A DNA stretch of 64,000 nucleotides from Scyliorhinus canicula. Taxonomy: Eukaryota. Location: assembly GCF_902713615.1 (NCBI RefSeq), contig NC_052153.1, positions 191,255,394 to 191,319,393 of the forward strand. The letters run 5' to 3'. Under the pieces are notes generated by a model. That model had not been told where the DNA came from, ran no database searches, and saw nothing but the letters and a program-made list of their open reading frames with translations. Position numbers and translations under genes: made by a program. Of this stretch, positions 421-62,428 are shown piece after piece. Position 1 is the stretch's first letter; each line of letters opens with the position of its first letter.

Positions 421-2188
421 GTACTCCCAGATGACCAGAGGCTGCGTTCCTCTTTGAGGGGGAGAGCTGACTGGTGGTGATTTAATAGTAATAATAAAAA
501 ACTTTTATTGTGTTTGTTTGTTTATTGAACCGAGGTTCAGTAAAAAATATTTTTCTGTGAGCAGCTCAAACAGATCATCTAGTACATGAAAAGAAAATAC
601 ATAATAGGACAACACAAGGTACACAATGTAAATATATAGACACCACAAGTAGGCTTACATTAACACTGCAATGAAGTTACTGTGAAAAGCCCCTAGTCGT
701 CACACTCAGGCGCCTGTTCGGGTACACAGAGGGAGAATTCAGAATGTCAATTCACCTAATAGCACGTCTTTCGGGACTTGTGGGAGGAAACCGGATCCCG
801 TTCCCTAAATATCCCCCACTGACACTTAGTCACTTGACCTACTTGGCCCTCCTCATTTGCAAGAACCATGTCCAGCAGTGCCTCCTTTCCTGCGTGATCG
901 GAAACGCACTGAACATAGAACATAGAACAGTACAGCACAGAACAGGCCCTTCGGCCCTCGATGTTGTGCCGAGCAATGATCACCCTACTTAAACCCACGT
1001 AACCCGTATACCCGTAACCCAACAATCTCCCCATTAACCTTACACTACGGGCAATTTAGCATGGCCAATCCACCTAACCCGCACATCTTTTGGACTGTGG
1101 GAGGAAACCGGAGCACCCGGAGGAAACCCACGCACACACGGGGAGGACGTGCAGACTCCACACAGACAGTGACCCAGCCGGGAATCGAACCTGGGACCCT
1201 GGAGCTGTGAAGCATTGATGCTAACCACCATGCTACCGTGAGGCCCCACTGCTGCAGGAAACTTTCTTAAGCACACTGTGGGAACTCTGCCCTTTACACT
1301 GTTACTATCCCAGTCTATATTTGGGTAATTAAAGTCGCCCCATTATAACATTTTTGCACTTGTCTGTAAATTCCTTACAAATTTATTCCTCTGCATCCTT
1401 CTCATGAGGTTCTGGCCCACACGGAGCAACGTCATTTTTGTTCCTTAGATTCAGCCAAATCAATTCTCTCCTTGGCCCCTCTAGGACGTCCTCTTTCTCC
1501 AGCACTGCAACGCTCCCCTTAATCCATCCCGCCAACCTTCCCCGTTTTTCTTCCTGTCCTATCGTTCCTGAATACCTTGTATCCAGGGATATTTAACACC
1601 CAGTCCTGTCCTTCTTTGAGCCAGGTCTCCGTTACAGTCACAACATCATATTTCCGCATGGCAATCTGTGCCTGTCACTCACCAATCTTATTTACCACAT
1701 TCCGTGAATTAACAACCTGATTTAGACTCTCTCTTTGTCCTTTACCCTGACCCCCGTCTGTTAATGTACTAGTGTATTTCTTAACCTAGTACTATGCACC
1801 TCCCTGAATACTCCTGGTCCGCACAGCCCTGCGAAGATGATTTAAACCCTGGTGTATCTTTTAAGTTTATCTTCAGGCACAGCAGTATGGTGAGAATTAG
1901 TTTAGACTACATACACGCTGATAGCATTTTCGGATCACTGTGTTCCTGAGATAGCACTGAGTGTTGACGGCATGGGAACCTTGGTGAATCCAGCAGATTT
2001 GTTGGATTGTTTGGGGAGCCATAAAACGCCCAACAAAAGAGGAATTGAAATGGTGAAAAAGAGGGTTTGACGGCCCATCACTCAATTCAGACCTTTAGTT
2101 ACATTCAGTGTGAGGGGTTAGGAACCACCCGGACATGAATCGCTGCTGTAGAGTTCTTGATTCAGGCATTTCTATATCTGTCTCAGCA

Positions 2189-2387
2189 CAGTAAGAAGTC
2201 TTACAACACCAGGTTAAAGTCCAACAGGTTTGTTTCAAACACTAGCTTTCGGAGCGCAGCTCCTTCCTCAGGTGAAGGAGCAGTGCTCCGAAAGCTCATG
2301 TTTGAAACAAACCTGTTGGACTTTAACCTGGTGTTGTAAGACTTCTTACTGTGCTCACCCCAGTCCAACGCTGGCATCTCCACACCA
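2189..2387. mobile_element. Short palindromic Penelope-like retro-element, copy 1
   Basis: Arms gtaagaagtcttacaacaccaggttaaagtccaacaggtttgtttcaaac and its reverse complement. 10-bp TSD TGTCTCAGCA at 2179-2188 and 2388-2397. Confidence 0.8.
2239..2275 (-). ncRNA. Minimal type I hammerhead ribozyme motif (copy 1)
   Basis: The - strand reads UCAC CUGAGGA A GGAGC UGC GCUCC GAAA GCU A GUGU. Confidence 0.6.
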
Positions 2388-2907
2388 TGTCTCAGCATAT
2401 ACTGCTCTGCACCTACCCGAACGTTGATGTTAATTGTTAGATTTGTAACTTACTGTCTCTCGCTTTCATGTATCTGTTACTAAAAGGGTGAGAATGATTC
2501 TCGACACTGGCAGCACGGTAGCCCGATGGCTAGCACAGCTGCTTCACAGCTCCAGGGTCCCAGGTTCGATTCCCGGCTTGAGTCACTCTCTGTGTGGAGT
2601 CTGCACGTTCTCCCCGTGTGTGCGTGGGTTTCCTCCGGATGCTCCGGTTTCCTCCCACAGTCCAAAGATGCACAGGTTAGGTGGATTGGCCATTTTAAAT
2701 TGCCCTTAGTGTCCAAAAGGGTTGGGTGGGGTTACGGGGATAAAGGGGGATAGGGTGGAGGCGTGGGCTTAAGTAGGGTGCTCTATCCAAGGGCCGGTGC
2801 AGACTCGATGGGCTGACTGGCCTCCTTCTGCACTGTAAATTCTATGATTCTATGAAGCCTTGTTGGGCTCTCTGTTTAACGCTGAATCATTGTTTGTGTC
2901 TCTTCAG

Positions 2908-3020
2908 TACAATATCTTCAGCGTTCAATTCACTGGCCGCCGTCACCATGACAGACCTGATTAGACCTCACTATCCGCATATGACTGAGGCTCGAGCCAC
3001 ACTGATATCCAAGAGTCTCG
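2908..3020 (+). CDS. SLC5A6: SLC5A6 internal coding exon (first visible in window): (S)[37 protein letters not shown]
   Basis: Acceptor tctcttcag|, donor |gtaagg, 113 nt, phase 2 to 1. The peptide matches the recalled human SMVT segment [21 protein letters not shown]. Upstream exons lie outside the window. Confidence 0.95.
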
Positions 3021-3190
3021 GTAAGGCACAGTGAAAAATAACAGCAATAACCTGGTGTGTCCAGGGTGTGTCTCTAGGGGGGGTGGGGGTGTCCAGGGAG
3101 TGTGTATGTGTTTAGGACATGTGTCTATCTGGGGAGGGGACGGCGTGTGTGTCTAGGGTGTGGGTATGTGTCTCTCAGGGGGTCTGTGTA

Positions 3191-4530
3191 TGTGTGTGTG
3201 TGTCTAGGCTGTGTGTGTGTGTGTCTAGGCTGTGTGTGTGTGTGTCTAGGCTGTTTGTGTGTCTAGGCTGTGTGTGTGTGTGTGTCTAGGCTGTGTGCGT
3301 GTCTGTCTAGGCTCTGTGCGTGTCTGTCTAGGCTGTGTGTGTGTCTGTCTAGGCTGTGTGTGTGTCTGTCTAGGCTGTGTGTGTCTGTCTAGGCTGTGTG
3401 TGTGTCTGTCTAGGCTGTGTGTGTGTCTGTCTAGGCTGTGTGTGTCTGTCTAGGCTGTGTGTGTGTCTGTCTAGGCTGTGTGTGTGTATGTCTAGGCTGT
3501 GTGTGTGTCTGTCTAGGCTGTGTGTGTGTGTGTCTAGGCTGTGTGTGTGTCTGTCTAGGCTGTGTGTGTGTATGTCTAGGCTGTGTGTGTGTCTGTCTAG
3601 GCTGTGTGTGTGTGTGTCTAGGCTGTGTGTGTGTCTGTCTAGGCTGTGTGTGTGTCTGTCTAGGCTGTGTGTGTGTGTGTCTAGGCTGTGTGTGTGTGTG
3701 TGTCTAGGCTGTGTGTGTGTCTGTCTAGGCTGTGTGTGTATCTGTCTAGGCTGTGTGTGTATCTGTCTAGGCTGTGTGTGTGTATCTGTCTAGGCTGTGT
3801 GTGTGTATCTGTCTAGGCTGTGTGTGTATCTGTCTAGGCTGTGTGTGTGTATGTCTAGGCTGTGTGTGTGTGTGTCTAGGCTGTGTGTGTGTCTGTCTAG
3901 GCTGTGTGTGTGTATGTCTAGGCTGTGTGTGTGTCTGTCTAGGCTGTGTGTGTGTCTGTCTAGGCTGTGTGTGTGTCTGTCTAGGCTGTGTGTGTGTCTG
4001 TCTAGGCTGTGTGTCTGTCTAGGCGCTGTGTGTGTGTCTGTCTAGGCTGTGTGTGTGTCTGTCTAGGCTGTGTGTGTGTCTGTCTAGGCTGTGTGTGTGT
4101 CTGTCTAGGCTGTGTGTGTCTGTCTAGGCTGTGTGTGTGTGTCTAGGCTGTGTGTGTGTGTGTCTAGGCTGTGTGTGTGTGTGTCTAGGCTGTGTGTGTG
4201 TGTGTCTAGGCTGTGTGTGTGTCTGTCTAGGCTGTGTGTGTGTCTGTCTAGGCTGTGTGTGTGTCTGTCTAGGCTGTGTGTGTGTCTGTCTAGGCTGTGT
4301 GTGTGTCTGTCTAGGCTGTGTGTGTGTCTGTCTAGGCTGTGTGTGTGTCTGTCTAGGCTGTGTCTGTCTAGGCTGTGTGTGTGTGTGTGTCTAGGCTGTG
4401 TGTGTGTGTGTGTCTAGGCTGTGTGTGTGTGTGTCTAGGCTGTGTGTGTGTGTGTCTCGGCTGTGTGTGTGTGTCTAGGCTGTGTGTGTGTGTCTAGGCT
4501 GTGTGTGTGTGTCTAGCCTGTGTGTGTCTA
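3191..4530 (+). repeat. (TG)n-containing minisatellite, unit about 16-24 bp (GTCTAGGCT(GT)n[CT])
   Basis: Direct tandem repeat in an SLC5A6 intron. Confidence 0.97.
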
Positions 4531-4624
4531 GGGGGGGTGTGTGTTTGTCTCGGGTGGGATGTGTGTGTGTCTGTCTATCTAGGGGGGGTGTCTAGGTGTG
4601 TGTGTCTCGGGGTGGGGGGGTGCC

Positions 4625-5846
4625 AAGGGTGCAGTAATATATTTCAAGGTGCTTCACGGGATCATTAGGACGGACAAAGGCGTTTGCCAAAGTCCCGCAT
4701 AATTGTGCAAAATTAAAGCGCATGAGATTGGGGGAAATGTATTGAGGTAGATAGAAAACTGGTTGGCAGAGAGGAAACAAAGAGTAGGGATGAATGGGTC
4801 CTTTTCAAATTGGCAGGTAGTAACTAGTGGGGTACCACAGAGATCGGTGCTGGGACCCCAGCTATTCACAATATATATATTAATGATGAGGGAACAAAAT
4901 GTAACATCTCAAAGTTTGCAGATGATAGCAAGTTGGGTGGGAGGGTGAATTGTGATGAGGATGCAGGGATCCTACAGCAAGATCTGGGCAGGTTGGGCAA
5001 GTGGGCAAAGCAATGGCAGATGCAGTATAATTTGGATAAGTGTGAGGTTATTCACTTTGGAAGCAAAAACAGGAAGGCAGATTACTACCTGAATGGTTGT
5101 AAATTGGGAGAGGGGAGTGTGCAGCGGGACCTGGGTGTCCTTGTGCACCATTCGCTGAAGGTAAGCATGCAGGTGCAGCAGGCGGTAAAGAAGGCTAATG
5201 GTATGTTGGCCTTCATTGCGCGAGGTTTTGAGTATAGAAGCAGGGATGTGTTGCTGCAATTGTACAGGGCCTTGGTGAGGTCACACCTGGAGTATTGTGT
5301 GTAGTTTTGGTCTCCTTCTCGGAGGAAGGATGTTCTTGCTCTCGAGGGAGTGAAGCGAAGGTTTACCAGACTGATTCCAGGGATGGCGGGACTGTCATAT
5401 GAGGAGAGATTGACTAGGTTGGGATTGTTCTCGCTGGAGTTCAGAAGAATGAGGGGGATCTCATCGAGACTTATAAAATTCTAACGGAGCTAGACAGGGT
5501 AGATGCAGGGAAGATGTTACCAATGGTGGGTGTGTCCAGAACCAGGGGTCACAGTCTGAGGATTCAGGATAAACCATTTCAGACACAGATAAGGAGACAT
5601 TTCTTCACCCAAAGAATGGTGAGCCTGTGGAATTCATTACCATAGGATGTAGTTGATGCTAAAACTTTGACTATATTCAAGAGGCAGCTGGATATAGCAC
5701 TCGAGGAGAATGGGATCAAAGGCTATAGGGAGGGAGCAGGATTAGGCTATTGAGTTGGATGATCAGCCATGATGGTGATGAATGGCGGAGCAGGCTCGAA
5801 GGGCCAAAAGGCCTCCTCCTACTCCTATCTTCTATGTATCTATGTA
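4625..5846 (+). mobile_element. CR1/HER1-type LINE, 5'-truncated RT and 3' UTR
   Basis: VTSGVPQ.SVLGP, QWQMQYNLDKCEV, ALVRSHLEYCV motifs; tail gggccaaaaggcctcc...tctatgtatctatgt. Confidence 0.9.
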
Positions 5847-7057
5847 CAACCAAAGTCTTGATGGAAGAAATAGGTTTTGAGAGGCTTCTGAAAGGAGATA
5901 GGAGAGTCAGAGAATGTTAGTGAGGGAATTCCAGACCCAATGGTGAGTCGATTACAATCGGTGACACGCACAAGGCTAGAATGTGAGGAGCGGAGATATC
6001 TTGGTGGGGTTGTCGGACCAGAGGAGATTATAGTGGTAGGGAGGGCAGAGACATGGGGGGTGCTGGGTGAACATGACTTGGTGCAAGTCAGGGTGCAGAG
6101 CAGTCGGGCTGGGAATTTGCTAACCTCAAAATTAAGATCTGTTTAAAGTGAATGTGGCATTGTCCAATCCCCATCAGTGAGGATTTAAATAACACAAATC
6201 CAGCAGTTTCCATCTCGAGCTCAGTATTCGGGCAGTGAGCCTGGCTTAATTAGAATTTTTTTTAAATCAGCTTTTGCCTTGTGATGTGTTTCTTTTGATG
6301 TGATTTTCCCAGTCTGGAATGCAGCTCCTTCACGTGTTGTTAGCAGTGGTCACCACCCTGTGACTGATTCTGAACATACAGGGGAAGGGGCGCCGACACC
6401 TGAGAGAATCTTAGAAGCAAGAAAGACTTTGGATTTGTGTGGTGCTTTTAACGAGTGCAGTGTTCAGACGATTAGCGGAGTTATTCAGGCAGAGAGCTGG
6501 CACAAGCACGATGGGCTGGAGGGCCCGTTTCTGTTCCGTCATTCCATTAATCCTCAAAAGTGCAGGAATGGAGATGACGTGAAATAGATTTTGCGCACAG
6601 CAAGCTCCCACAGACAGCAGTACACGATGACAAGAAAAACCTGTTTTTACTTTTGTTTGTGGAAGGGTAAATATTGGCCTGGGCACAGGAGAGAACTTCC
6701 CTGGTTGCCCTCCCAATAGTGCGCGGAATCTTGTACGTTCACCGAGATCGCAGATGGGGTCTGTGGTTAATGTCCCATCCATTTAAACACAGCCTAATTT
6801 TAACCAGCATGTCCAGCCCCTGTGCCCCAGACGGCACTCTTCTCACTTCCCCATCACCGGGTCGACTTTCAGGTCATCATGTTTCTGGGCTCTGGAATTT
6901 CCTTTCCTTCCCCACTTCTTACCCTGCAAACTCCTGCTTCTCTCCTCGCCTTCTAATCCTACCTGGCCATCCCTTTAGTCATCTCTCCTTATTCTATCTT
7001 GAACTCCAGTAAGAAGTCTTCCAACACCAGGTTAATGACCAACAGGTTTGTTTGGAA

Positions 7058-7094
7058 TCGCTAGCTTTCGGAGCACAGCTCCTTCCTCAGGTGA
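7058..7094 (-). ncRNA. Minimal type I hammerhead ribozyme motif (opposite arm of copy 2)
   Basis: The - strand reads UCAC CUGAGGA A GGAGC UGU GCUCC GAAA GCU A GCGA. Confidence 0.6.
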
Positions 7095-7324
7095 GTGAAG
7101 AGGTAGGTTACACAACCACAGCATATATGGACAAAGCCAATGATGCAAGGTGATACTTTGAATGCGAATCTTTAAGTCTTCATAGGTCCAGACGGTGCGA
7201 CCTGTGATTATCCCTCTCTCTAGTCGCACCGCCTGGACCTGTAAAAAATTACCTGCAAAGACTCGCAATCATCTTGCATCATTGGCTTTGTCTATATATG
7301 TGTTTGTGTAACCCACCTCTTCAT

Positions 7325-7361
7325 TCGCCTGAGGAAGGAGCTTCACTCCGAAAGCTAGTGA
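7325..7361 (+). ncRNA. Minimal type I hammerhead ribozyme motif
   Basis: Stem I UCGC/GUGA; core CUGAGGA (7329-7335) plus an extra A; stem II GGAG/CUCC; GAAA; palindromic AGCU helix III; predicted cleavage after CUA at 7357. Confidence 0.65.
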
Positions 7362-8469
7362 CTACATACAAACCTGTTGGACTTTAACCTGGTGTTCCAA
7401 GACGTCTTACTGTGCTCACCCCAGTCCAACGCCGGCATCTCCGCATCATATCCTGAATTAGAGATTCCGTATATCTGCCATTCAAGGGCGGGTGTTGGAA
7501 AGATGTCTGATTACAATAGTGATAGGATATGGGGTAGGGAGGCACAGGTCTTTGAAGAATTTGGACTTGTTTCGGAGGCGAGGCATCACTGTGTGGGATC
7601 TTCCCTTGAGTGCTTAGTGGCTAGAATTATGGTTGTCTTCAATGTCTTACGCTAGCTCCATGGGACTGTGCACAATTTAGAGCTGAGGAACAGGCCATTT
7701 GTCCCAACTGGCCCATGCTGCTGTTTACGCTCCGCACCAGCCTCCTGCTATCTCTCTTCATCTCACCCCATCAACATATCGTGGGAGTTATAGAATGGTT
7801 GCAGCATAGAGAGAGGCCATTCGGCCCATCGTATTGGCAAGAGCAACTCGCCTTATCTCGTTCCCCTGCCTTTTCCCTGTGATCTTGCAATTTCCTTTCT
7901 TTTCAGATAATCATCCAACTCCCTCTTGATTGCATCGACTGAATCTGCCTCCACTAGACTCTCAGGCAGAACATTCCAGATCCTACCCACTCGCTGTGTT
8001 TAAAAACTGTTTTTCCTCGTGTTGATATTTGCTTCTTTTGCCAACTGCCTACACTCTGTGTCCCTCTGGCCCTCGATCTTCCACCAGTGAGAACTATTTC
8101 TCCCTAGTGACTTTGTCCAGACCCCTCATGATTTTGATCACCTCCATTAAACCTCCTTTCAACTTTCTCTTCTTCAATCTGTCCTCGTGAACCAAGTTCC
8201 TCATTCCTGGAACCATCCTCGTGAATCATCCCTAACATCCTCTCCAATGCTTTCATACTCTTCCTAAAGCATCCGGAACTGGACACAATTCTTCATTTGA
8301 TACCAAAACAGTGTTTTACGCATATTTGACATAACTTCCTTGATTTTGTATTCTGGCCTGTTTTATAAGCCCAGGATATTGTATGCTTTACTAACCGCTC
8401 CTGTCCGACCATCTTCAACCAAGTCAAGGTTATTAATATATATCTGGAAAAACGAGGGTCCTAACACTG

Positions 8470-9450: not shown

Positions 9451-9625
9451 TAAAAAATCTCCTTTGTGTTCGACCAGGTTCTCCTTAAATGCATCCGTGA
9501 TATTTTCTGCAATCATTTCATGTGGTAGTAAGCTCCACCCTCTGACCACTCTCTGAATAAAGACGTTTTTACCTGTGCCTCTTGCCTGTAGCGTACAGTA
9601 AATGAGAGTTCCTGTGTTTTTGCAG

Positions 9626-9693
9626 CGCTGGGCTATGGTTTGCTGTGTCTCGGAATGGCATACATCGCATCGCTGATGGGCTCAGTGCTACAG
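9626..9693 (+). CDS. SLC5A6: SLC5A6 coding exon: (A)[22 protein letters not shown]
   Basis: Acceptor tttttgcag|, donor |gtgctg, 68 nt, phase 1 to 0, in frame with the previous exon. Matches human [22 protein letters not shown]. Confidence 0.95.
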
Positions 9694-9781
9694 GTGCTGT
9701 ATCAAACACCTCTCTTTCAATGTATTTGTATTGTTCCCAACTGCTTGGAGTTTCTGACCTGCTCCCTTCCTTCAAACTCAG

Positions 9782-9868
9782 GCGGCGCTGAGTATCTTCG
9801 GGATGATTGGTGGTCCCCTGCTTGGAGTCTTCTGCCTCGGAATGTTTTTCCCCATGGCTAATTCCACG
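9782..9868 (+). CDS. SLC5A6: SLC5A6 coding exon: [29 protein letters not shown]
   Basis: Acceptor aaactcag|, donor |gtgagt, 87 nt, phase 0 to 0, after an 88-nt intron. Matches human [24 protein letters not shown]. Confidence 0.96.
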
Positions 9869-15668: not shown

Positions 15669-18600
15669 GAGAGAGCGAGAACGAGAGAGAGCGCGAGCCA
15701 GAGAGAGCGAGAGCCGGGGAGAGCGCGAGAGCCGGGAAGAGCGCGAGAGCCGTAGAGAGAGCGCGAGAGCCGTAGAGAGAGAGCGCGAGAGCCGTAGAGA
15801 GAGCGCGAGAGCCGTAGAGAGAGCGCGAGAGCCGTAGAGAGAGCACGAGAGTCGTAGAGAGAGAGCGCGAGAGTCGTAGAGAGAGAGCGCGAGAGCCGTA
15901 GAGAGAGCGCGAGAGCCGTAGAGAGAGCGCGAGAGCCGTAGAGAGAGCGCGAGAGCCGTAGAGAGAGCGCGAGAGCCGTAGAGAGAGCGCGAGAGCCGTA
16001 GAGAGAGCGCGAGAGCCGTAGAGAGAGCGCGAGAGCCGTAGAGAGAGCGCGAGAGCCGTAGAGAGAGCGCGAGAGCCGTAGAGAGAGCGCGAGAGCCGTA
16101 GGAGAGCGCGAGGCCGTAGGGAGAGCGCGAGAGCCGTAGAGAGAGCGCGAGAGCCGTAGAGAGAGCGCGAGAGCCGTAGAGAGAGCGCGAGAGCCGTAGA
16201 GAGAGCGCGAGAGCCGTAGAGAGAGCGCGAGAGCCGTAGAGAGAGCGCGAGAGCCGTAGAGAGAGCGCGAGAGCCGTAGAGAGAGCGCGAGAGCCGTAGA
16301 GAGAGCGCGAGAGCCGTAGAGAGAGCGCGAGAGCCGTAGAGAGAGCGCGAGAGCCGTAGAGAGAGCGCGAGAGCCGTAGAGAGAGAGAGAGCGCGAGAGC
16401 CGTAGAGAGAGAGCGCGAGAGCCGTAGAGAGAGAGAGCGCGAGAGCCGTAGAGAGAGAGCGCGAGAGCCGTAGAGAGAGAGCGCGAGAGCCGTAGAGAGA
16501 GAGCGCGAGAGCCGGAGAGAGAGAGCGCGAGAGCCGGAGAGAGAGAGCGCGAGAGCCGGAGAGAGAGAGCGCGAGAGCCGTAGAGAGAGAGCGCGAGAGC
16601 CGTAGAGAGAGAGCGCGAGAGCCGTAGAGAGAGAGCGCGAGAGCCGTAGAGAGAGAGCGCGAGAGCCGTAGAGAGAGAGCGCGAGAGCCGTAGAGAGAGA
16701 GCGCGAGAGCCGTAGAGAGAGAGAGCGCGAGAGCCGTAGAGAGAGAGCGCGAGAGCCGTAGAGAGAGAGCGCGAGAGCCGTAGAGAGAGAGCGCGAGAGC
16801 CGTAGAGAGAGAGCGCGAGAGCCGTAGAGAGAGCGCGAGAGCCGTAGTGAGAGCGCGAGAGCCGTAGAGAGAGCGCGAGAGCCGTAGAGAGAGCGCGAGA
16901 GCCGTAGAGAGAGCGCGAGAGCCGTAGAGAGAGAGCGCGAGAGCCGTAGAGAGAGAGCGCGAGAGCCGTAGAGAGAGAGCGCGAGAGCCGTAGAGAGAGA
17001 GGGAGCCGGAGAGAGAGAGCGAGAGAGGGAGCCGGAGAGAGAGAGCGCGAGAGCCGTAGAGAGAGAGCGCGAGAGCCGTAGAGAGAGAGCGCGAGAGGCC
17101 GTAGATAGAGAGAGCGCGAGAGCCGTAGAGAGAGAGCGCGAGAGCCGTAGAGAGAGAGCGCGAGAGCCGTAAGAGAGAGAGCGCGAGAGCCGTAGAGAAG
17201 AGAGCGCGAGAAGCCGTAGAGAGAGAGCGCGAGAGCCGTATAGAGAGAGCGCGAGAGCCGTAGAGAGAGCGCGAGAGCCGTAGAGAGAGCGCGAGAGCCG
17301 TAGTGAGAGCGCGAGAGCCGTAGAGAGAGCGCGAGAGCCGTAGAGAGAGCGCGAGAGCCGTAGAGGAGAGCGCGAGAGCCGTAGAGAGAGAGCGCGAGAG
17401 CCGTAGAGAGAGAGCGCGAGAGCCGTAGAGAGAGCGAGAGCCGGAGAGAGAGAGCGCGAGAGCCGTAGAGAGAGAGCGCGAGAGCCGGAGAGAGAGAGCG
17501 CGAGAGCCGTAGAGAGAGAGCGCGAGAGCCGGAGAGAGAGAGCGCGAGAGCCGGAGAGAGAGAGCGCGAGAGCCGGAGAGAGGGAGCGCGAGAGCCGGAG
17601 AGAGGAGCGCGAGAGCCGGAGAGAGGGAGCGCGAGAGCCGGAGAGAGGGAGCGCGAGAGCCGGAGAGAGGGAGCGCGAGAGCCGGAGAGAGGGAGCGCGA
17701 GAGCCGGAGAGAGGGAGCGCGAGAGCCGGAGAGAGGGAGCGCGAGAGCCGGAGAGAGGGAGCGCCAGAGCCGGAGAGAGGGAGCGCCAGAGAGAGAGGGA
17801 GCGCCAGAGAGAGAGGGAGCGCCAGGGAGAGAGGGAGCGCGAGAAAGAGAGGGAGCGCGAGAGCGAGGGAGCGCGAGACGGAGAGAGGGAGCGCGAGACG
17901 GAGAGAGGGAGCGCGAGACGGAGAGAGGGAGCGCGAGACGGAGAGAGGGAGCGCGAGACGGAGAGAGGGAGCGCGAGACGGAGAGAGGGAGCGCGAGACG
18001 GAGAGAGGGAGCGCGAGAGCCGGAGAGAGGGAGCGCGAGAGCCGGAGGGGGAGCGCGAGAGCCGAGAGAGGGGCGCGAGAGCCGGAGAGAGGGAGCGCGA
18101 GAGCCGGAGAGAGGGAGCGCGAGAGCCGGAGAGAGGGAGCGCAGAGCCGGAGAGAGGGAGCGCGAGAGCCGCAGAGAGGGAGCGCGAGAGCCGGGAGAGG
18201 GAGCGCAGAGCCGGAGAGAGGGAGCGCGAAGCCGAGAGAGGGAGCGCGAGAGCCGAGAGAGGGAGCGCGAGAGCCGGAGAGAGGAGCGCGAGAGCCGGAG
18301 AGAGGGAGCGCGAGAGCCGGAGAGAGGGCGCGAGAGCCGGAGAGAGGGAGCGCGAGAGCCGGAGAGAGGGAGCGCGAGAGCCGGAGAGAGGGAGCGCGAG
18401 AGCCAGAGAGGGAGCGCGAGAGCCGGAGAGAGGGAGCGCGAGAGCCGGAGAGAGGGAGCGCGAGAGCCGGAGAGAGGGAGCGCGAGAGCCGGAGAGAGGG
18501 AGCGCGAGAGCCGGAGAGAGGGAGCGCGAGAGCCGGAGAGAGGGACGCGAGAGCCGGAGAGAGGGAGCGCGAGAGCCGGAGAGAGGGAGCGCGAGAGCCG

Positions 18601-21200
18601 GAAGAGAGCGCGAGAGCCGGAGAGAGGGACGCGGGAGCCGGAGAGAGGGAGCGCGAGAGCCGGAGAGAGGGAGCGGGAGACGGAGAGAGGGAGCGCGAGA
18701 CGGAGAGAGGGAGCGCGAGACGGAGAGAGGGAGCGGGAGACGGAGAGAGGGAGCGGGAGACGGAGAGAGGGCGCGCGAGACGGAGAGAGGGAGCGGGAGA
18801 CGGAGAGAGGGAGCGCGCGAGCCGAGAGAGGGAGCGCGCGAGACGGAGAGAGGGGAGCGGGAGACGGAGAGAGGGAGCGCGCGAGACGGAGAGAGGGAGC
18901 GCGAGGCGGAGAGAGGGACGCGCGAGCCGGAGAGAGGAGCGCGCGAGCCGAGAGAGGGAGCGCGCGAGCCGGAGAGAGGGAGCGCGCGAGCCGAGGAGGA
19001 GAGCGCGCGAGCCGGAGAGAGGGGGCGCGCGAGCCGGAGAGAGGGAGCGCGAGAGCCGGAGAGAGGGAGCGCGCGAGCCGGAGAGAGGGAGCGCGCGAGC
19101 CGGAGAGAGGGAGCGCGCGAGCCGGAGAGAGGGAGCGCGCGAGCCGGAGAGAGGGAGCGCGCGAGCCGGAGAGAGGGAGCGCGCGAGCCGGAGAGAGGGG
19201 AGCGCGAACCGGAGAGAGGGAGCGCGCGAGCCGGAGAGAGGGAGCGCGCGAGCCGGAGAGAGGGCGCGCGCGAGCCGGAGAGAGGGGCGCGAGCGGGAGA
19301 GAGCGCGCGAGCCGGAGAGAGGGAGCGCGCGAGCCGGAGAGAGGGAGCGCGCGAGCCGGAGAGAGGGACGCGCGAGCCGAGAGAGGGAGCGCGCGAGCCG
19401 GAGAGAGGGAGCGCGCGAGCCGGAGAGAGGGAGCGCGCGAGCCGGAGAGAGGGAGCGCGCGAGCCGGAGAGAGGGAGCGCGCGAGCCGGAGAGAGGGAGC
19501 GCGCGAGCCGGAGAGAGGGGGCGCGCGAGCCGGGGAGAGGGAGCGCGCGAGCCGGAGAGAGGGGAGCGCGCGAGCCGGAGAGAGGGAGCGCGCGAGCCGG
19601 AGAGAGGGAGCGCGCGAGCCGGAGAGAGGGAGCGCGCGAGCCGGAGAGAGGGAGCGCGCGAGCCGGAGAGAGGGAGCGCGCGAGCCGGAGAGAGGGAGCG
19701 CGCGAGCCGGAGAGAGGGAGCGCGCGAGCCGGAGAGAGGGAGCGCGCGAGCCGGAGAGAGGGAGCGCGCGAGCCGGAGAGAGGGAGCGCGAGAGCCGGAG
19801 AGAGGGAGCGCGAGAGCCGGAGAGAGGGAGCGCGAGAGCCGGAGAGAGGGAGCGCGAGAGACGGAGAGAGGGAGCGCGAGAGACGGAGAGAGGGAGCGAG
19901 AGACGGAGAGGGGGAGCGAGAGACGGAGAGGGGGAGCGAGAGACGGAGAGGGGGAGCGAGAGAGCCGGAAGAGAGGGAGCGGGAGAGGGAGAGAGGGAGC
20001 GCGAGAGCCGAGAGAGGAGCGCGAGAGCCGAGAGAGGGAGGCGAGAGCCGGAGAGAGGAGCGCGAGAGCCGGAGAGAGAGAGGGAGCGCGAGAGCCGGAG
20101 AGCGGGAGCGCGAGACGGAGAGAGGGAGCGCGAGAGACGGAGAGAGGGAGCGCGAGAGACGGAGAGAGGGAGCGCGAGAGACGGAGAGAGGGAGCGCGAG
20201 AGACGGAGAGAGGGAGCGCGAGAGACGGAGAGAGGGAGCGCGAGACGGAGAGAGGGAGCGCGAGAGCGGAGAGAGGGAGCGCGAGAGCCGGAGAGAGGGA
20301 GCGCGAGACGGAGAGAGGGGAGCGCGAGAGCCGGAGAGAGGAGCGCGAGAGCCGGAGAGGGAGCGCGAGAGAGGAGAGAGGGAGCGCGAGAGCCGGAGAG
20401 AGGGAGCGCGAGAGCCGGAGAGAGGGAGCGCGAGAGCCGGAGAGAGGGAGCGCGAGAGCCGGAGAGAGGGAGCGCGAGAGCCGGAGAGAGGGAGCGCGAG
20501 AGCCGGAGAGAGGGAGCGCGAGAGCCGGAGAGAGGGAGCGCGAGAGCCGGAGAGAGGGAGCGCGAGAGCCGGAGAGAGGGAGCGCGAGAGCCGGAGAGAG
20601 GGAGCGCGAGAGCCGGAGAGAGGGAGCGCGAGAGCCGGAGAGAGGGAGCGCGAGAGCCGGAGAGAGGGGAGCGCGAGAGCCGGAGAGAGGGAGCGCGAGA
20701 GCCGGAGAGAGGGAGCGCGAGAGCCGGAGAGAGGGAGCGCGAGAGCCGGAGAGAGGGAGCGCGAGAGCCGGAGAGAGGGAGCGCGAGAGCCGGAGAGAGG
20801 GAGCGCGAGAGCCGGAGAGAGGGAGCGCGAGAGCCGGAGAGAGGGAGCGCGAGAGCCGGAGAGAGGGAGCGCGAGAGCCGGAGAGAGGGAGCGCGAGAGC
20901 CGGAGAGAGGGAGCGCGAGAGCCGGAGAGAGGGAGCGCGAGAGCCGGAGAGAGGGAGCGCGAGAGCCGGAGAGAGGGAGCGCGAGAGCCGGAGAGAGGGA
21001 GCGCGAGAGCCGGAGAGAGGGAGCGCGAGAGCCGGAGAGAGGGAGCGCGAGAGCCGGAGAGAGGGAGCGCGAGAGCCGGAGAGAGGGAGCGCGAGAGCCG
21101 GAGAGAGGGAGCGCGAGAGCCGGAGAGAGGGAGCGCGAGAGCCGGAGAGAGGGAGCGCGAGAGCCGGAGAGAGGGAGCGCGAGAGCCGGAGAGAGGGAGG
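15669..21200 (+). repeat. 5.5-kb purine-rich minisatellite, unit about 18-20 bp (GAGAGAGGGAGCGCGAGAGCCG and variants)
   Basis: Direct tandem repeat with blocks of variant units, inside the SLC5A6 intron 15209-24081. Confidence 0.98.
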
Positions 21201-21239
21201 GACACACACAAGAATTGAAGTGCAGAAGTTGGGAACATG

Positions 21240-23275
21240 GGCTGTCAGGGAAGGACACAAGTGAAATGTGGAACTTGTTCAAGGAACAGGTACTGCGTGT
21301 CTTTGATATGTATGTCCCTGTCAGGCAGGGATGAGATGGTCGAGTGAGGGAACCATGGTTGACAAGAGAGGTTGACTGTCTTGTTAAGAGGAAGAAGGCG
21401 ACTTATGTCAGGCTGAAGAAACAAGGTTCAGACAGGGCGCTGGAGAGATACAAGATAGCCAGGAGGGAACTGAAGAAAGGGATTAGGAGAGCTAAGAGAG
21501 GGCATGAAAAATCTTTGGCGGGTAGGTTCAAGGAAAACCCCAAGGCCTTTTACACATATGTGAGAAATATGAGAATGACTAGAGTGAGGGTAGGTCCGAT
21601 TAAGGACAGTAGCGGGAGATTGTGTATTGAGTCTGAAGAGATAGGAGAGGTCTTGAACAAGTGTTTTTCTTCAGTATTTACAAACGAGAGGGGCCATATT
21701 GTTGGTTAGGACAGCGTGAAGCAGACTGATAAGCTTGAGGAGATACTTGTCAGGAAGGAAGATGTGTTGCGCGTTTTGAAAAACTTGAGGATAGACAAGT
21801 CCCCCGGGCCTGACGGGATATATCCAAGGATTGTATGGGAAGCAAGAAATGAAATTGCAGAGCCGTTGGCAATGATCTTTTCGTCCTCGCTGTCAACAGG
21901 GGTGGTACCAGAGGATTGGAGAGTGGCGAATGTCGTGCCCCTGTTCAAAAAAGGGAATAGGGATAACCCTGGGAATTACAGGCCAGTTAGTCTTACTTCG
22001 GTGGTAGGCAAAGTAATGGAAAGGGTACTGAGGGATAGGATTTCTGAGCATCTGGAAAGGCATTGCTTGATTAGGGATAGTCAGCACGGATTTGTGAGGG
22101 GTAGGTCTTGCCTTACAAGTCTTATTGAATTCTTTGAGGAGGTGACCAAGCATGTGGATGAAGGTAAAGCAGTGGATGTAGTGTACATGGATTTTAGTAA
22201 GGCATTTGATAAGGTTCCCCATGGTAGGCTTATGCAGAAAGTAAGGAGGCATGGGATAGTGGGAAATTTGGCCAGTTGGATAACAAACTGGCTAACCGAT
22301 AGAAGACAGAGAGTGGTGGTGGATGGCAAATATTCAGCCTGGAGCCCAGTTATCAGTGGCGTACCGCAGGGATCAGCTCTGGGTCCTCTGCTGTTTGTGA
22401 TTTTCATTAACGACTTGGATGAGGGAGTTGAAGGGTGGGTCAGTAAATTTGCAGATGATACGAAGATTGGTGGAGTTGTGGATAGTGAGGAGGCCGTTGT
22501 CGGCTTCAAAGAGACATAGATAGAATGCAGAGCTGGGCTGAGAAGTGGCAGATGGAGTTTAACCCTGACAAGTGTGAGGTTGTCCATTTTGGAAGGACAA
22601 ATCTGAATGCGGAATACAGGGTTAATGGTAGGGTTCTTGGCAATGTGGAGGAGCAGAGAGATCTTGGGGTCTATGTTCATAGTTCTTTGAAAGTTGCCAC
22701 TCAAGTGGATAGAGTTGTGAAGAAGGCCTATGGTGTGCTAGCGTTCATTAGCAGAGGGATTGAATTTAAGAGCCGTGAGGTGATGATGCAGCTGTACAAA
22801 ACCTTGGTCAGGCCACATTTGGAGTACTGTGTGCAGTTCTAATCACCTCATTTTAGGAAGGATGTGGAAGCTTTGGAAAAGGTGCAAAGGAGATTTACCA
22901 GGATGTTGCCTGGAATGGAGAGTAGGTCATACGAGGAAAGGTTGAGGGTGCTAGGCCTTTTCTCATTAGAACGGCGAAGGATGAGGGGCGACTTGATAGA
23001 GGTTTATAAGATGATCAGGGGAATAGATAGAGTAGACAGTCAGAGACTTTTTCCCCGGGTGGAACACACCATTACAAGGGGACATAAATTTAAGATAAAT
23101 GGTGGACGATGTAGAGGGGATGTCAGAGGTAGGTTCTTTACCCAGAGAGTAGTGGGGGCATGGAATGCACTGCCTGTGGTAGTAGTTGAGTCGGAAAAGT
23201 TAGGGACCTTCAAGCGGCTATTGGATAGGTACTTGGATTAGGGTAGAATAATGGAGTGTAGGTTAACTTCTTAAG
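21240..23275 (+). mobile_element. CR1/HER1-type LINE ORF2 (RT) fragment with a few stops and frameshifts
   Basis: [62 protein letters not shown]. Confidence 0.95.
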
Positions 23276-24522: not shown

Positions 24523-26124
24523 ACCATCAGCCGGACGGTACAGTCTGCGGCTCGCTCACCATCAGCCGGACGGTACAGTCTGCGGCTCGCTCACCATCAG
24601 CCGGACGGTACAGTCTGCGGCTCGCCGTCAGCCGGACGGTACAGTCTGCGGCTCGCCGTCAGCCGGATGGTACAGTCTGCGGCTCGCCGTCAGCCGGACG
24701 GTACAGTCTGCGGCTCGCCGTCAGCCGGACGGTACAGTCTGCGGCTCGCTCACCATCAGCCGGACGGTACAGTCTGCGGCTCGCCGTCAGCCGGACGGTA
24801 CAGTCTGCGGCTCGCCGTCAGCCAGACGGTACAGTCTGCGGCTCGCTCACCATCAGCCAGACGGTACAGTCTGCGGCTCGCTCACCATCAGCCGGACGGT
24901 ACAGTCTGCGGCTCGCTCACCATCAGCCGGACGGTACAGTCTGCGGCTCGCCGTCAGCCAGACGGTACAGTCTGCGGCTCGCCGTCAGCCGGACGGTACA
25001 GTCTGCGGCTCGCCGTCAGCCGGACGGTACAGTCTGCGGCTCGCTCACCATCAGCCGGACGGTACAGTCTGCGGCTCGCCGTCAGCCGGACGGTACAGTC
25101 TGCGGCTCGCCGTCAGCCGGACGGTACAGTCTGCGGCTCGCCGTCAGCCGGACGGTACAGTCTGCGGCTCGCCGTCAGCCAGACGGTACAGTCTGCGGCT
25201 CGCTCACCATCAGCCAGACGGTACAGTCTGCGGCTCGCTCACCATCAGCCGGACGGTACAGTCTGCGGCTCGCTCACCATCAGCCGGACGGTACAGTCTG
25301 CGGCTCGCCGTCAGCCAGACGGTACAGTCTGCGGCTCGCCGTCAGCCGGACGGTACAGTCTGCGGCTCGCCGTCAGCCGGACGGTACAGTCTGCGGCTCG
25401 CTCACCATCAGCCGGACGGTACAGTCTGCGGCTCGCCGTCAGCCGGACGGTACAGTCTGCGGCTCGCCGTCAGCCGGACGGTACAGTCTGCGGCTCGCCG
25501 TCAGCCGGACGGTACAGTCTGCGGCTCGCCGTCAGCCGGACGGTACAGTCTGCGGCTCGCCGTCAGCCGGGCGGTACAGTCTGCGGCTCGCCGTCAGCCG
25601 GACGGTACAGTCTGCGGCTCGCCGTCAGGCAGACGGTACAGTCTGCGGCTCGCCGTCAGGCAGACGGTACAGTCTGCGGCTCGCCGTCAGGCAGACGGTA
25701 CAGTCTGCGGCTCGCCGTCAGGCAGACGGTACAGTCTGCGGCTCGCCGTCAGGCAGACGGTACAGTCTGCGGCTCGCCGTCAGGCAGACGGTACAGTCTG
25801 CGGCTCGCCGTCAGGCAGACGGTACAGTCTGCGGCTCGCCGTCAGGCAGACGGTACAGTCTGCGGCTCGCCGTCAGGCAGACGGTACAGTCTGCGGCTCG
25901 CCGTCAGGCAGACGGTACAGTCTGCGGCTCGCCGTCAGGCAGACGGTACAGTCTGCGGCTCGCCGTCAGGCAGACGGTACAGTCTGCGGCTCGCCGTCAG
26001 GCAGACGGTACAGTCTGCGGCTCGCCATCAGGCAGACGGTACAATCTGCGGCACGCCGTCAGGCAGACGGTACAATCTGCGGCTCGCCATCAGGCAGACG
26101 GTTCTGTCTGTGGCTCGCCATCAG
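24523..26124 (+). repeat. 31/35-bp minisatellite with a 357-bp higher-order duplication
   Basis: Units cagccggacggtacagtctgcggctcg+ccgt (31) or +ctcaccat (35). The variant gccagacgg recurs at 24821 and 25178. Confidence 0.95.
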
Positions 26125-31315: not shown

Positions 31316-31833
31316 ATGTATGTTTGTGTTCAAAGTATATTGTCTGGTCTAAGCGAGTTGTTAAATGTCAGTGTGTAGATGCAGTGTTTCTGATTCCATG
31401 TGACAGCTGCTGGTCCAGTATTTGGTGCATTTTACTGTTTGTTGTGCTGCATGGTTGGGAACGTTTTGTAACAATGTCCGATTTCTCAGCAAGGACATGC
31501 TAAACACACACTCAATATTCATACCATCGAAAGCCAAGCAGGGTGGCGCAGTGGTTAGCACTGTGGAGTCCATGTGGCGTTTGCACATTCTCCCCGTGTC
31601 TGCGTGGGTCTCACCCCCACAACCCATGGATTGGCCACACTAAATTGCCCCTTGATTGGGGGGAAAAAAAAGAGAACCGGGTACTCTAAGTTTTAATAAA
31701 TAATTATACCATCACAATAATCTGTAGCATGGTGGATAATCAACCAGCACGGTAATTGGGCTGGCCCTGGAGTGAACAAAAATTACCTTGAAAGCTGTCA
31801 GTTTGCTCTAAAAGGCCAGGAGATTGGTTGAGA

Positions 31834-32816
31834 CAGTAGTGTGGAGGTTAAGCGTACAGTAGTGTGGAGGTTAAGAGTGCGGTAGTGTGGATGTTCAGTG
31901 TACGGTCGTGCGGAGGTTAAGCGTACAGTAGTGTGGAGGTTAAGCGTACAGTAGTGTGGATGTTAAGCATACAGCAGTGTGGATGTTAAGCGTACAGCAG
32001 TGCGGAGGTTAAGCGTACAGTAGTGTGGAGGTTAAGCGTACAGTAGTGTGGAGGTTAAGCGTACAGCAGTGCGGAGGTTAAGCGTACAGTAGTGTGGAGG
32101 TTAAGCATACAGTACAGTGGAGGTTAAGCGTACAGCAGTGTGGATGTTAAGCGTACAGCAGTGTGGATGTTAAGCGTACAGCAGTGTGGAGGTTAAGCGT
32201 ACAGCAGTGCGGAGGTTAAGCGTACAGCAGTGTGGAGGTTAAGCGTACAGCAGTGTGGAGGTTAAGCGTACAGCAGTGCGGAGGTTAAGCGTACAGCAGT
32301 GTGGAGGTTAAGCGTACAGCAGTGTGGATGTTAAGCATACAGCAGTGTGGAGGTTAAGCGTACAGTAGTGTGGAGGTTAAGCATACAGCAGTGCGGAGGT
32401 TAAGCGTACAGTAGTGTGGAGGTTAAGCGTACAGCAGTGTGGAGGTTAAGCGTACAGCAGTGTGGAGGTTAAGCGTACATTAGTGTGGATGTTAAGCATA
32501 CAGCAGTGTGGAGGTTAAGCGTACAGTAGTGTGGAGGTTAAGCATACAGCAGTGCGGAGGTTAAGCGTACAGCAGTGTGGAGGTTAAGCGTACAGTAGTG
32601 TGGAGGTTAAGCATACAGCAGTGCGGAGGTTAAGCGTACAGTAGTGTGGATGTTAAGCGTACAGTAGTGTAGATGTTAAGCGTACAGTAGTGTGGAGGTT
32701 AAGCGTACAGCAGTGCGGAGGTTAAGCGTACAGTAGTGTGGAGGTTAAGCGTACAGCAGTGTGGAGGTTAAGCGTACAGCAGTGCGGAGGTTAAGCGTAC
32801 AGTAGTGTGGAGGTTA
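31834..32816 (+). repeat. 23-bp minisatellite, about 42 copies (GTTAAGCGTACAGYAGTGYGGAK)
   Basis: Direct tandem repeat with no spacers. Confidence 0.97.
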
Positions 32817-61048: not shown

Positions 61049-61089
61049 GCGTTGTGAGATAAATTGAAACCAGAGAGCCTTTCCAAACT

Positions 61090-61200
61090 CCACCCGTATC
61101 CATGACAACGTACCCACTGAGTCATTTACATCACCAGCTGTGGAAAGGACAAGCAACCGAATGATCATTGTCCGGGTGTGAACATTAATTCAATTCAGTT
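61090..61200 (-). pseudogene. Degenerate paralog of the receptor leader/V-exon start, or a leader exon/24-nt microexon (61114-61137)
   Basis: atgatcattcggttgcttgtcctttccacagctggtgatgtaaatgactcagtg aligns without gaps over 54 nt to ctgatcattctgttgtttgtcctttcctcagctgccggtggaaatgacttagtg at 55582-55529. Followed by a phase-1 donor G|gtacgt. Confidence 0.6.
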
Positions 61201-61958
61201 CAGAGCTCTCCCTTTGCTCCAGTTACTGGGCGCTAGTAGGAACTGGCATTGCACAATGTAGATTCAGCCATTAAATACCCCAGGGTGTGAGGGGAATGGT
61301 ACAGAACAGATTGAAACATGGCTACAAAACAGGAAACAGAGGGGAGGAGATAAGGAAAGAGAAAATGCTGGAAAATCTCAGCAGGTCTGGCAGCATCAGT
61401 GGTTAGCACTGTTGCTTCACAGCGCCAGGATCCCAGGTTCGATTCCCGGTTTGGGTCACTGTCTATGCGGAGTCTGCACCTTCTCCCCGTGTCTGCGTGG
61501 GCTTCCTCCGGGTGCTCCGGTTTCCTCCCACAAGTCCCGAAAGACGTGCTGTTAGGTAATTTGGGCATTCAGAATTCCCCCTCCGTGTACCCGAACAGGC
61601 GCCGGAGTGTGGCGACTAGGGGATTTTCACAGTAACTTCATTGCAGTGTTAATGTAAGCCCACTTGTGACAATGAAGATTATTATTAGAATGAGGCTTGT
61701 GAGCTACAAGCACAAATTGATTTGTGGGAATATGAGGTCGTGGGAATATCAGAAAAGTGGCAAAACATGGTGAGGTCCAGGTGCTGGATACGCAAGGGCA
61801 TAAAGTTCAGAAAAGATGGGGAAGGCAAAATGAGAGGTGAGGTGTTTGAACTAATTAGGGAAAACAGTTTAACGTTGGAAAGGGAGATTATCCCTTTTGC
61901 CTAAAGTGAAATACTTAACATTCTTAATCACCGGGGATATTCTGTCAGTCTCCAAATA

Positions 61959-62100
61959 TGACCAGGTTAAAGTCCCACAGGTTTGTTTCAAATCACTAGC
62001 TTTCAGCAGTTCCTTTACCTGAGGAAGGAGCAGTGCTCAGAAATCTAGTGATTCGAAACAAGCCTGTTGGACTTTAACCTGGTGTTGTAAGACTTCTTAC
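61959..62100. mobile_element. Short palindromic Penelope-like retro-element, copy 4 (truncated, degenerate core)
   Basis: 13-bp TSD CAGTCTCCAAATA at 61946-61958 and 62101-62113. Confidence 0.8.
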
Positions 62101-62428
62101 CAGTCTCCAAATAGTAAGAGATAGGGGAGGAAATCTGCAGTAAAATCGTGGCCACGTGGCCATTGTGACATTGGGCACTTTAATTACAGAAATATAGATT
62201 GGACTATTCGAGTAAAGGGTAGAGGAAGTAAATGAATTTCTAGAATTTGTTCCGGGAACTCCCTTGATTAACATGCTGTCGGTTCGAATAGAAAGAACGC
62301 ATTGCTCCATCTGGTGCTGGGAGATGAAATGGCGCAAGGCTCGTCGGGGGGAATACTTGGGTCAGAGTGATAATCGCATCATGAGGTGTAGATATTCATG
62401 GAGAAGGGAAAGGAACAATCAATAGTAA

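What the first reader, a model, noticed from the sequence alone, without database searches (positions are those of the whole stretch)
2179..62113. Family of short palindromic retro-elements carrying hammerhead ribozymes (4 copies in 64 kb)
Seen: copies at 2189-2387, 7004-7448, 53351-53562 and 61959-62100 are non-coding inverted repeats, each flanked by a TSD of variable length (10, about 9, 12 and 13 bp). One end tends to stop at or near gacttcttac; the other runs to catctccacatcat. The arms read CUGAGGA-A-GGAGC-nnn-GCUCC-GAAA-GCU-A/C. Known: this is the hammerhead core (CUGANGA...GAAA...UH) with an extra A after A9 and a palindromic 4-nt helix III (AGCU). That layout matches the minimal, dimer-acting type I hammerheads of Penelope-like elements and retrozymes, and Penelope elements often carry inverted terminal repeats. 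Inferred: these are non-autonomous, TPRT-mobilised, retrozyme-like elements that look like MITEs but move through RNA, probably at high copy number in this shark genome.
Basis: partly seen in the sequence, partly recalled or inferred. Interest (0 to 1): 0.8.

Follow-up and report, generated by a model that had tools for sequence, protein, structure and literature searches.

The report
Twin Penelope retroelement ends with hammerheads
The four small palindromes are real, but they are ordinary fossil insertions of the ribozyme-bearing end of a shark Penelope-like retrotransposon, laid down as two mirror-image short copies, a form already described for this class.

Summary
Four non-coding inverted-repeat elements lie at 2189-2387, 7007-7449, 53351-53562 and 61959-62100. 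Their target-site duplications are 10, about 11 (8 of 11 bases), 12 and 13 bp. Each arm carries a minimal type I hammerhead core.

The anatomy matches published Penelope-like element (PLE) insertions point by point:
- two head-to-head, 5'-short copies sit inside one duplication;
- both outer ends fall at two fixed sites 38-43 nt apart, so a 'tail' is present at one end only;
- the hammerhead has the extra base after A9, a G10.1-C11.1 pair and no helix III (palindromic AGCU).

Reads and contigs from public runs show a very high copy number. Over 90% of family depth stops 4 nt upstream of the CUGA box. Transcripts are heterogeneous and come from both strands, and no RNA ends pile up at the predicted cut site.

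Nothing supports a retrozyme (no direct tandem copies, no circle signal) or a MITE. Whether the short form has its own short master RNA is open. One copy's two arms carry different subfamily markers, which hints at two template RNAs per insertion.

This scan had already noted the same kind of element many times elsewhere in this genome (178 notes). Low interest; new member of a known kind.

The parts
2179..2188 (.). c1 target-site duplication, left copy (10 bp; right copy 2388-2397)
2189..2274 (-). c1 arm without tail. The sense strand is minus. The outer end lies at RT start site 1 (CTTACTG). It holds an intact minimal hammerhead at 2243-2271 plus the helix I 5' strand.
2275..2387 (+). c1 arm with tail. 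It starts inside the hammerhead core (at G8/A9). The tail is 2350-2387 (38 nt).
7007..7201 (-). c2 arm without tail. It reaches about 110 nt upstream of the hammerhead. The hammerhead core is intact at 7062-7090, with the helix I 5' strand at 7091-7094.
7202..7222 (.). c2 centre: a 21-nt spacer between the two arms
   Evidence: direct reading
7223..7449 (+). c2 arm with tail. The hammerhead at 7329-7357 has a 4-bp helix I (7325-7328). The tail is 7411-7449 (39 nt).
53339..53350 (.). c3 target-site duplication, left copy (12 bp; right copy 53563-53574)
53351..53477 (-). c3 arm with tail (tail 53351-53393). The hammerhead at 53445-53473 has one broken stem II pair.
53478..53562 (+). c3 arm without tail. 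The hammerhead at 53481-53509 has U16.1 changed to C.
61946..61958 (.). c4 target-site duplication, left copy (13 bp; right copy 62101-62113)
61959..62012 (-). c4 left arm. Its hammerhead is decayed and partly deleted. Its outer end stops about 18 nt before site 1.
62013..62100 (+). c4 right arm, ending at site 1. The hammerhead at 62019-62047 has C11.1 changed to A and G15.2 changed to U.

Best explanation
Each element is one fossil insertion made by the reverse transcriptase and endonuclease of a Penelope-like element (PLE).

1. The enzyme cut both strands of the target a staggered 10-13 bp apart.
2. Each free 3' end primed reverse transcription of PLE RNA at one of two fixed internal start sites. 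Site 1 lies after CUUAC(UG). Site 2 lies 38-43 nt downstream, after CAUCAU(GG).
3. The two cDNAs ran only a short way, through the hammerhead region, and were joined head to head.
4. The result is a palindrome whose arms both read, from centre to edge: minimal hammerhead, about 55 nt, start site. The 38-43 nt 'tail' appears on the side that used site 2.

The hammerhead is part of the parent PLE RNA. It has the core CUGAGGA, an extra A, a 5-bp helix II and GAAA. There is no helix III, only the palindrome AGCU, so two ribozymes must pair to make it. In these copies it is a passenger and decays neutrally.

Shown here: the anatomy, the copy number and the family-wide end positions. Inferred from published PLE biochemistry: the priming of both strands and the meaning of the two sites. 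Not shown: ribozyme activity, and the autonomous partner.
For: - Arm alignment: the outer ends fall at only two positions and the inner ends vary. In c1, c3 and c4 the inner ends lie within 7 nt of the CUGA box. In c2 they lie about 110 nt upstream on each arm, with a 21-nt spacer.
- The tail is present on exactly one arm in c1, c2 and c3.
- The duplications are 10, about 11, 12 and 13 bp.
- c1 shows 4 nt of overlap between the target and the start of the tail.
- Family-wide, 17,571 and 13,115 DNA contigs of two samples lie on c2. Loose ends with heterogeneous, A/T-rich continuations sit at 7007 and 7447-7450, which are the two end sites. Depth falls more than tenfold beyond 7094-7101, and many joints start at 7094.
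- Literature: minimal hammerheads occur in PLE repeats with an extra base between positions 9 and 10.1, a G10.1-C11.1 pair and palindromic 15.2-16.2. Pairs on opposite strands lie 100-700 bp apart (PMC4209133).
- An inverted 5'-truncated copy and a 30-40 bp tail at one end are described for PLEs (PMC8557442).
- A purified PLE protein cuts and extends both strands and starts at two adjacent internal sites that bracket the tail (PMC11167929).
Against: - The window holds no PLE reading frame. The only reverse transcriptase, at 21344-23241, looks LINE-type. The link to an autonomous partner therefore rests on anatomy, on the literature and on unchecked earlier notes of this scan.
- Rfam's hammerhead models do not match, even at E up to 10. 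This is expected for a motif without helix III, but it means no curated model supports the call.
- Seven arms give no covariation beyond shuffles.
- The core is no better conserved than the flanks: 88.5% against 90.7%.
- The sharp family-wide boundary 4 nt before the CUGA box is not explained by random 5' truncation.
Confidence: 0.8

Rival explanations
1. A dedicated non-autonomous 'mini-Penelope'. A short master RNA begins at the first base of helix I and extends past start site 2. It is copied in trans by PLE enzymes and still inserts as twin arms. In this reading the 200-bp palindromes are full-length products, not truncated ones.
For: More than 90% of summed family depth ends 4 nt upstream of the CUGA box, and many joints start at 7094. 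In c1, c3 and c4 one arm reaches -4 or -5. A preprint derives animal retrozymes from PLE repeats (10.64898/2026.07.22.740005).
Against: Longer copies such as c2, and about 8% of depth, continue upstream. Poly(A) reads show no pile-up of RNA ends at -4. The same boundary would arise if ordinary PLE transcripts start there and the enzyme uses the start site nearest the 5' end. Summed contig depth is not a copy count.
Confidence: 0.2
2. The whole palindrome is the mobile unit. A read-through RNA containing both arms is reverse-transcribed in one pass, so the palindrome is inherited.
For: c1 and c4 share the same junction layout: one arm reaches -4 and the other starts at G8/A9. The left arm of c4 ends short of site 1, as a 5' truncation of a palindromic template would.
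Against: In c1, c2 and c3 both outer ends sit exactly at the two start sites and abut the duplication. One-pass copying of a read-through RNA would not give this. The junctions of c2 and c3 differ from that of c1 and c4. Such RNA folds into a hairpin of -139 to -277 kcal/mol.
Confidence: 0.05
3. Retrozyme proper: a unit excised by two hammerheads, circularised and spread through a circular RNA.
For: A hammerhead is present. Related minimal motifs need dimers, as vertebrate retrozyme ribozymes do (PMC7229834).
Against: There are no direct tandem copies in the window, and the two hammerheads of each element face opposite ways. The motif is the minimal type, without loop-loop contacts. The arms span the predicted cut site, so the template was uncut. 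The joints listed include no backward joints in raw RNA reads, and no ends pile up at the cut site.
Confidence: 0.03
4. A MITE moved by a DNA transposase.
For: Short, non-coding, with terminal inverted repeats and flanking duplications.
Against: The duplication length varies from 10 to 13 bp. The ends are asymmetric, with a one-sided tail of 38-43 nt. The centre varies, and one outer end is truncated.
Confidence: 0.01

Closest known systems
Penelope-like element insertions with an inverted 5'-truncated copy and a one-sided tail (Penelope/Poseidon, Neptune; PMC8557442, PMC11167929)
   Same: Head-to-head short copies inside one duplication. Variable-length duplications. A tail of 38-43 nt at one end only, bounded by two fixed end sites. 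A hammerhead near the 3' part of the inserted unit.
   Different: These are extremely short: about 85-125 nt per arm in three of four copies. Family-wide there is a sharp inner boundary at the first base of helix I. No reading frame is present in the window.
Minimal hammerheads of metazoan PLEs (Cervera and De la Pena 2014, PMC4209133)
   Same: CUGANGA and GAAA boxes. An extra base after A9. A G10.1-C11.1 pair. No helix III, with a palindromic 15.2-16.2 (AGCU). A short helix I of 3-4 bp. Pairs on opposite strands 100-700 bp apart. Thousands of copies.
   Different: Helix II here is 5 bp, against the 7-8 bp described for Schistosoma. Activity was not tested. A shark family is not named in that paper.
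Animal non-LTR retrozymes (PMC7229834; preprint 10.64898/2026.07.22.740005)
   Same: Non-coding and hammerhead-bearing. Probably dependent on PLE enzymes. Long, variable duplications.
   Different: Retrozymes are direct tandem repeats with canonical type I hammerheads and abundant circular RNA. These are inverted pairs with minimal motifs and no circle signal.
L1 twin priming (established knowledge, not checked here)
   Same: Both target strands prime cDNA in one event, which gives an inverted structure inside one duplication.
   Different: In L1 the second primer anneals inside the RNA and gives an inversion with truncation. Here both primers start at the same fixed sites, which gives a true palindrome.

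Membership tests
Penelope-like element insertion | An autonomous partner with RT and GIY-YIG frames carrying the same hammerhead and 3' region | not testable with these tools
   The window has no PLE frame. A metagenome scan found nothing. Earlier notes of this scan report such elements in the same genome, but I did not check them.
Penelope-like element insertion | An adjacent inverted 5'-truncated copy forming an inverted repeat inside one duplication | tested here: met
   All four copies.
Penelope-like element insertion | A 30-40 bp tail at one end only | tested here: met
   38, 39 and 43 nt in c1, c2 and c3, each on one arm only; none in c4. Family-wide ends lie at 7007 and 7447-7450.
Penelope-like element insertion | Target-site duplications of variable length | tested here: met
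   10, about 11, 12 and 13 bp.
Penelope-like element insertion | Preference for A/T-rich targets | tested here: inconclusive
   The loose-end consensus beyond the tail is A/T-rich. The four duplications here are not clearly so.
Hammerhead ribozyme, minimal type I of PLEs | Core boxes CUGANGA and GAAA, U16.1-H17, a G10.1-C11.1 pair and an extra base after A9 | tested here: met
   Three arms pass a strict descriptor, against 0 hits in 100 random windows. The remaining arms differ from it by point changes, a 5' truncation (c1 tail arm) or a deletion (c4 left arm).
Hammerhead ribozyme, minimal type I of PLEs | Helices I and II supported by covariation | tested here: inconclusive
   84% of cells pair in register, against 20-52% when slid. 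There is no covariation beyond shuffles with 7 arms.
Hammerhead ribozyme (Rfam models) | Match to a curated hammerhead covariance model | tested here: not met
   No hit at gathering score or at E up to 10. The motif lacks helix III.
Hammerhead ribozyme | Self-cleavage at GCUA|G | not testable with these tools
   No pile-up of read ends at the site in one poly(A) run. That library type is a weak test.
Non-LTR retrozyme | Direct tandem repeats, each with a hammerhead | tested here: not met
   The hammerheads of each element are on opposite strands. Same-strand neighbours are 5 kb or more apart and belong to separate insertions.
Non-LTR retrozyme | Unit-length circular RNA | tested here: inconclusive
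   The listed joints include no backward joints in raw RNA reads. Only poly(A)-selected reads and contigs were available.
MITE | A fixed short duplication and symmetric terminal inverted repeats | tested here: not met

The most novel reading that the evidence does not exclude
The short palindromes are not randomly truncated. They would be run-off copies of an RNA that begins exactly at helix I of the hammerhead. The two arms of one insertion can come from two different RNA molecules, so the enzyme would work as a dimer with two templates, perhaps held together by the paired minimal hammerheads.

The basis is threefold. The family-wide boundary lies at -4. The junctions of c1, c3 and c4 show the same boundary. 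The two arms of c3 differ at three sites that are polymorphic in the family.
Probability: 0.3. Interest if true: 0.45.

Novelty: new member of a known kind. Interest (0 to 1): 0.2.

Why it matters
It matters little as a discovery. The ribozyme type, the mirror-image insertion form and the one-sided tail are all published for Penelope-like elements. This scan has also flagged the same thing many times in this genome.

It is useful for annotation. These abundant fold-backs should be labelled as Penelope fragments, not as MITEs, microRNA-like hairpins or retrozymes.

Two side observations could inform the poorly understood Penelope integration mechanism if they hold genome-wide. One is the sharp inner boundary at the first base of helix I. 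The other is the presence of different subfamily markers in the two arms of one insertion.

Tried and rejected
- Rfam gave no hammerhead hit at gathering score over the whole window, or at E up to 10 over 2100-7600. It returned only weak microRNA-like hits caused by the palindromes.
- My first hammerhead pattern had the wrong loop spacing and found nothing. The corrected pattern worked.
- An exact-word scan of metagenome contigs found 0 matches.
- A search of earlier findings by sequence was blank.
- My first covariation count had helix I one column out of register. Redone, it was still uninformative.
- Folding the 96 nt from the cut site to the tail end gave z = -0.18, so there is no notable structure.
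- I looked for a PLE frame in the window and found only a LINE-type reverse transcriptase and tandem-repeat pseudo-frames.
- I considered a hairpin (snap-back) origin for the second arm and rejected it. The arm that reaches furthest inward is the tail arm in c3 but the tail-less arm in c1.
- I considered a splice acceptor at the -4 boundary. There is no AG there.
Full report
WHAT IS THERE

Reading the four places confirms four short, non-coding inverted repeats.
- A 27-nt word from the arms occurs 7 times with up to 3 mismatches, against 0 expected.
- The hammerhead word CTGAGGAAGGAGC-4 nt-CTCCGAAAGC also occurs 7 times, against 0 expected.
- blastn of each copy against the window finds only these four loci, each also matching itself in reverse.

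I aligned all eight arms in the sense of the ribozyme, from palindrome centre to outer end. They share one layout:
- up to four bases of helix I, then CUGAGGA;
- an extra A;
- a 5-bp helix II with a 3-nt loop, then GAAA;
- GCUA, the predicted cut, then GUG;
- about 50 nt that include a well-kept 32-nt block (94.6% mean pairwise identity);
- the outer end.

THE ENDS

The outer ends fall at only two positions. 'Site 1' follows CTTAC(TG). It is used by one arm each of c1, c2 and c3 and by the right arm of c4. 'Site 2' lies 38-43 nt further on, after CATCAT(GG), and is used by the other arm of c1, c2 and c3. The extension is therefore present at one end only. The left arm of c4 stops about 18 nt before site 1.

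The duplications abut these ends directly:
- c1: 10 bp, 2179-2188 and 2388-2397.
- c3: 12 bp, 53339-53350 and 53563-53574.
- c4: 13 bp, 61946-61958 and 62101-62113.
- c2: decayed, 8 of 11 bases, 6996-7006 and 7450-7460 (and direct reading).

In c1, 4 nt are shared between the target and the first bases of the tail. This is the kind of overlap expected when a nicked target primes on RNA.

The inner ends differ between copies. In c2 each arm runs about 110 nt upstream of the ribozyme, and a 21-nt spacer separates the arms. In c1, c3 and c4 one arm reaches 4-5 nt upstream of CUGA. The other arm starts between -1 and +7.

THE RIBOZYME

A strict descriptor was written after the published minimal motif. 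It requires the core boxes, an optional extra base, helix II of 4-8 bp, a palindromic 15.2-16.2 and U16.1-H17. It hits only 2243-2271(-), 7062-7090(-) and 7329-7357(+), with 0 hits in 100 random windows. The other arms differ by single changes, a 5' truncation (c1 tail arm) or a deletion (c4 left arm):
- a broken helix II pair in the c3 tail arm;
- U16.1 to C in the c3 short arm;
- C11.1 to A and G15.2 to U in c4.

A 39-nt monomer folds with helices I and II as its lowest-energy structure.

Rfam's curated hammerhead models find nothing, even at E up to 10. This fits a motif that has no helix III of its own.

Seven arms give 84% pairing in register, against 20-52% when slid, but no covariation beyond shuffles. 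The core is no better kept than the rest of the arm: 88.5% against 90.7%. These are neutrally decaying copies. The call 'hammerhead' therefore rests on the match to the published consensus, not on evidence of function here.

That consensus lists exactly the features seen: a base between 9 and 10.1, a G10.1-C11.1 pair and palindromic 15.2-16.2. It also describes thousands of copies per genome, pairs on opposite strands 100-700 bp apart, and only weak cleavage in vitro as dimers (PMC4209133).

WHAT IT IS

PLE insertions are described as highly 5'-truncated. They often have an inverted 5'-truncated copy alongside and a 30-40 bp tail at one end only (PMC8557442).

A purified PLE protein from the green anole behaves as follows (PMC11167929):
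- it cuts and extends both target strands;
- it starts reverse transcription at two adjacent internal sites of the RNA, and the tail is the stretch between them;
- it prefers A/T-rich DNA;
- it does not need ribozyme cleavage for insertion;
- no RNA-seq reads ended at the ribozyme site.

Every structural point matches the four elements here. I therefore read each as one PLE insertion event. Both target strands primed cDNA at site 1 or site 2, and the two short cDNAs were joined head to head.

A MITE is excluded by the variable duplications and the asymmetric ends.

A retrozyme is not supported. Those are direct tandem repeats expressed as circles (PMC7229834), whereas here the two ribozymes of a copy face opposite ways. 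The arms also span the cut site, so the template was uncut. A read-through RNA would fold into a hairpin of -139 to -277 kcal/mol.

FAMILY-WIDE EVIDENCE

Contigs and reads of four public runs were laid on c2 at 80% likeness.
- 17,571 and 13,115 DNA contigs of two samples matched, so the copy number is very high.
- Loose ends with heterogeneous, A/T-rich continuations sit at 7007 (site 1) and 7447-7450 (site 2). This confirms both end sites genome-wide.
- Summed depth falls from about 1.0-1.5 million to about 86,000 just beyond 7094-7101, and then lower. Many joints start at 7094, the base 4 nt upstream of CUGA.
- Raw poly(A) reads (2,519 laid) come from both strands in similar numbers. 78% run on into unrelated sequence, as expected for copies carried inside host transcripts.
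- No place shows a pile-up of molecule ends.
- RNA and DNA runs of two related species also hold most sampled words of c1.

Summed contig depth is not a copy count, so the 90% figure is rough.

OPEN POINTS

(a) Random truncation does not explain the sharp boundary at the first base of helix I. There are two readings.
- Ordinary PLE transcripts begin there, and the enzyme often uses the start site nearest the RNA 5' end.
- A short dedicated master RNA exists.

(b) The two arms of c3 lie inside one 12-bp duplication but differ at three sites that are polymorphic among the other arms. The c3 short arm shares all three states with the c2 short arm. The c3 tail arm shares all three with the c1 tail arm. 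At least two of these three sites also vary genome-wide. By a rough estimate, chance coincidence is about 1 in 1,000. This hints that the two arms can be copied from two different RNA molecules. It is one case and needs a genome-wide test.

CONTEXT

The window holds no PLE reading frame. The only reverse transcriptase, at 21344-23241, looks LINE-type by its motifs. That classification is my own knowledge; the Pfam hit is only RVT_1.

Earlier notes of this scan list 178 entries on hammerhead plus Penelope in the same genome. They include a 5-kb head-to-head copy with open RT and endonuclease frames and GIY-YIG ends followed by minimal hammerheads. I used them as leads only.

VERDICT

The ribozyme and Penelope assignment is supported by the published consensus and by the anatomy. 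The retrozyme reading is not supported. This is a new member of a known kind, of low interest, with two small mechanistic leads.

Noticed in passing
window 53351-53562 (c3), compared with c1 and c2 arms: The two arms of one insertion differ at three family-polymorphic sites: the first base of the loop, an A 4 nt after the cut, and a T/G 11 nt before site 1. Each arm matches a different other copy. This suggests two template RNAs in one integration event.
   Followed up: partly
window 7094 (c2), and the centres of c1, c3, c4: Family-wide, depth and joints stop 4 nt upstream of the CUGA box, exactly at the first base of helix I. Three of the four copies here have an arm that ends at -4 or -5.
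   Followed up: partly
window 7088-7096, and the equivalent place in c1, c3, c4: The antisense strand of the hammerhead box reads CAG|GTGAGT in c2 and CAG|GTRA in the others. This is a consensus-like 5' splice site that intronic copies could offer to host transcripts.
   Followed up: no
window 15703-21199: A 22-bp tandem array of about 257 copies (93% matches) creates stop-free pseudo-frames of about 1,900 aa in all three minus-strand frames.
   Followed up: no
window 24527-26124, 3191-4577 and 31833-32816: Further long minisatellites with periods of 31, 21 and 23 bp (50, 67 and 43 copies). The first gives a 593-aa pseudo-frame.
   Followed up: no
window 21344-23241 (+): Reverse transcriptase fragments in several frames (RVT_1, E = 1.3e-28). 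The motifs look LINE-type (CR1/L2-like) rather than Penelope-type.
   Followed up: partly
window 53014-53305: A perfect 36-bp x 8 tandem array lies 45 bp from the tail end of c3.
   Followed up: no
window 2380-2389, 7440-7449 and 53351-53360: The tail ends in ...ACATCATGG, an ATG in good Kozak context right at start site 2. It may be the start of the parent element's reading frame. This cannot be checked from these copies.
   Followed up: no
runs X9-X14, X29, X30: Runs of two other species (organisms B and C) hold 56-75% of the sampled words of c1. Either the family or this very insertion is shared with related species.
   Followed up: no
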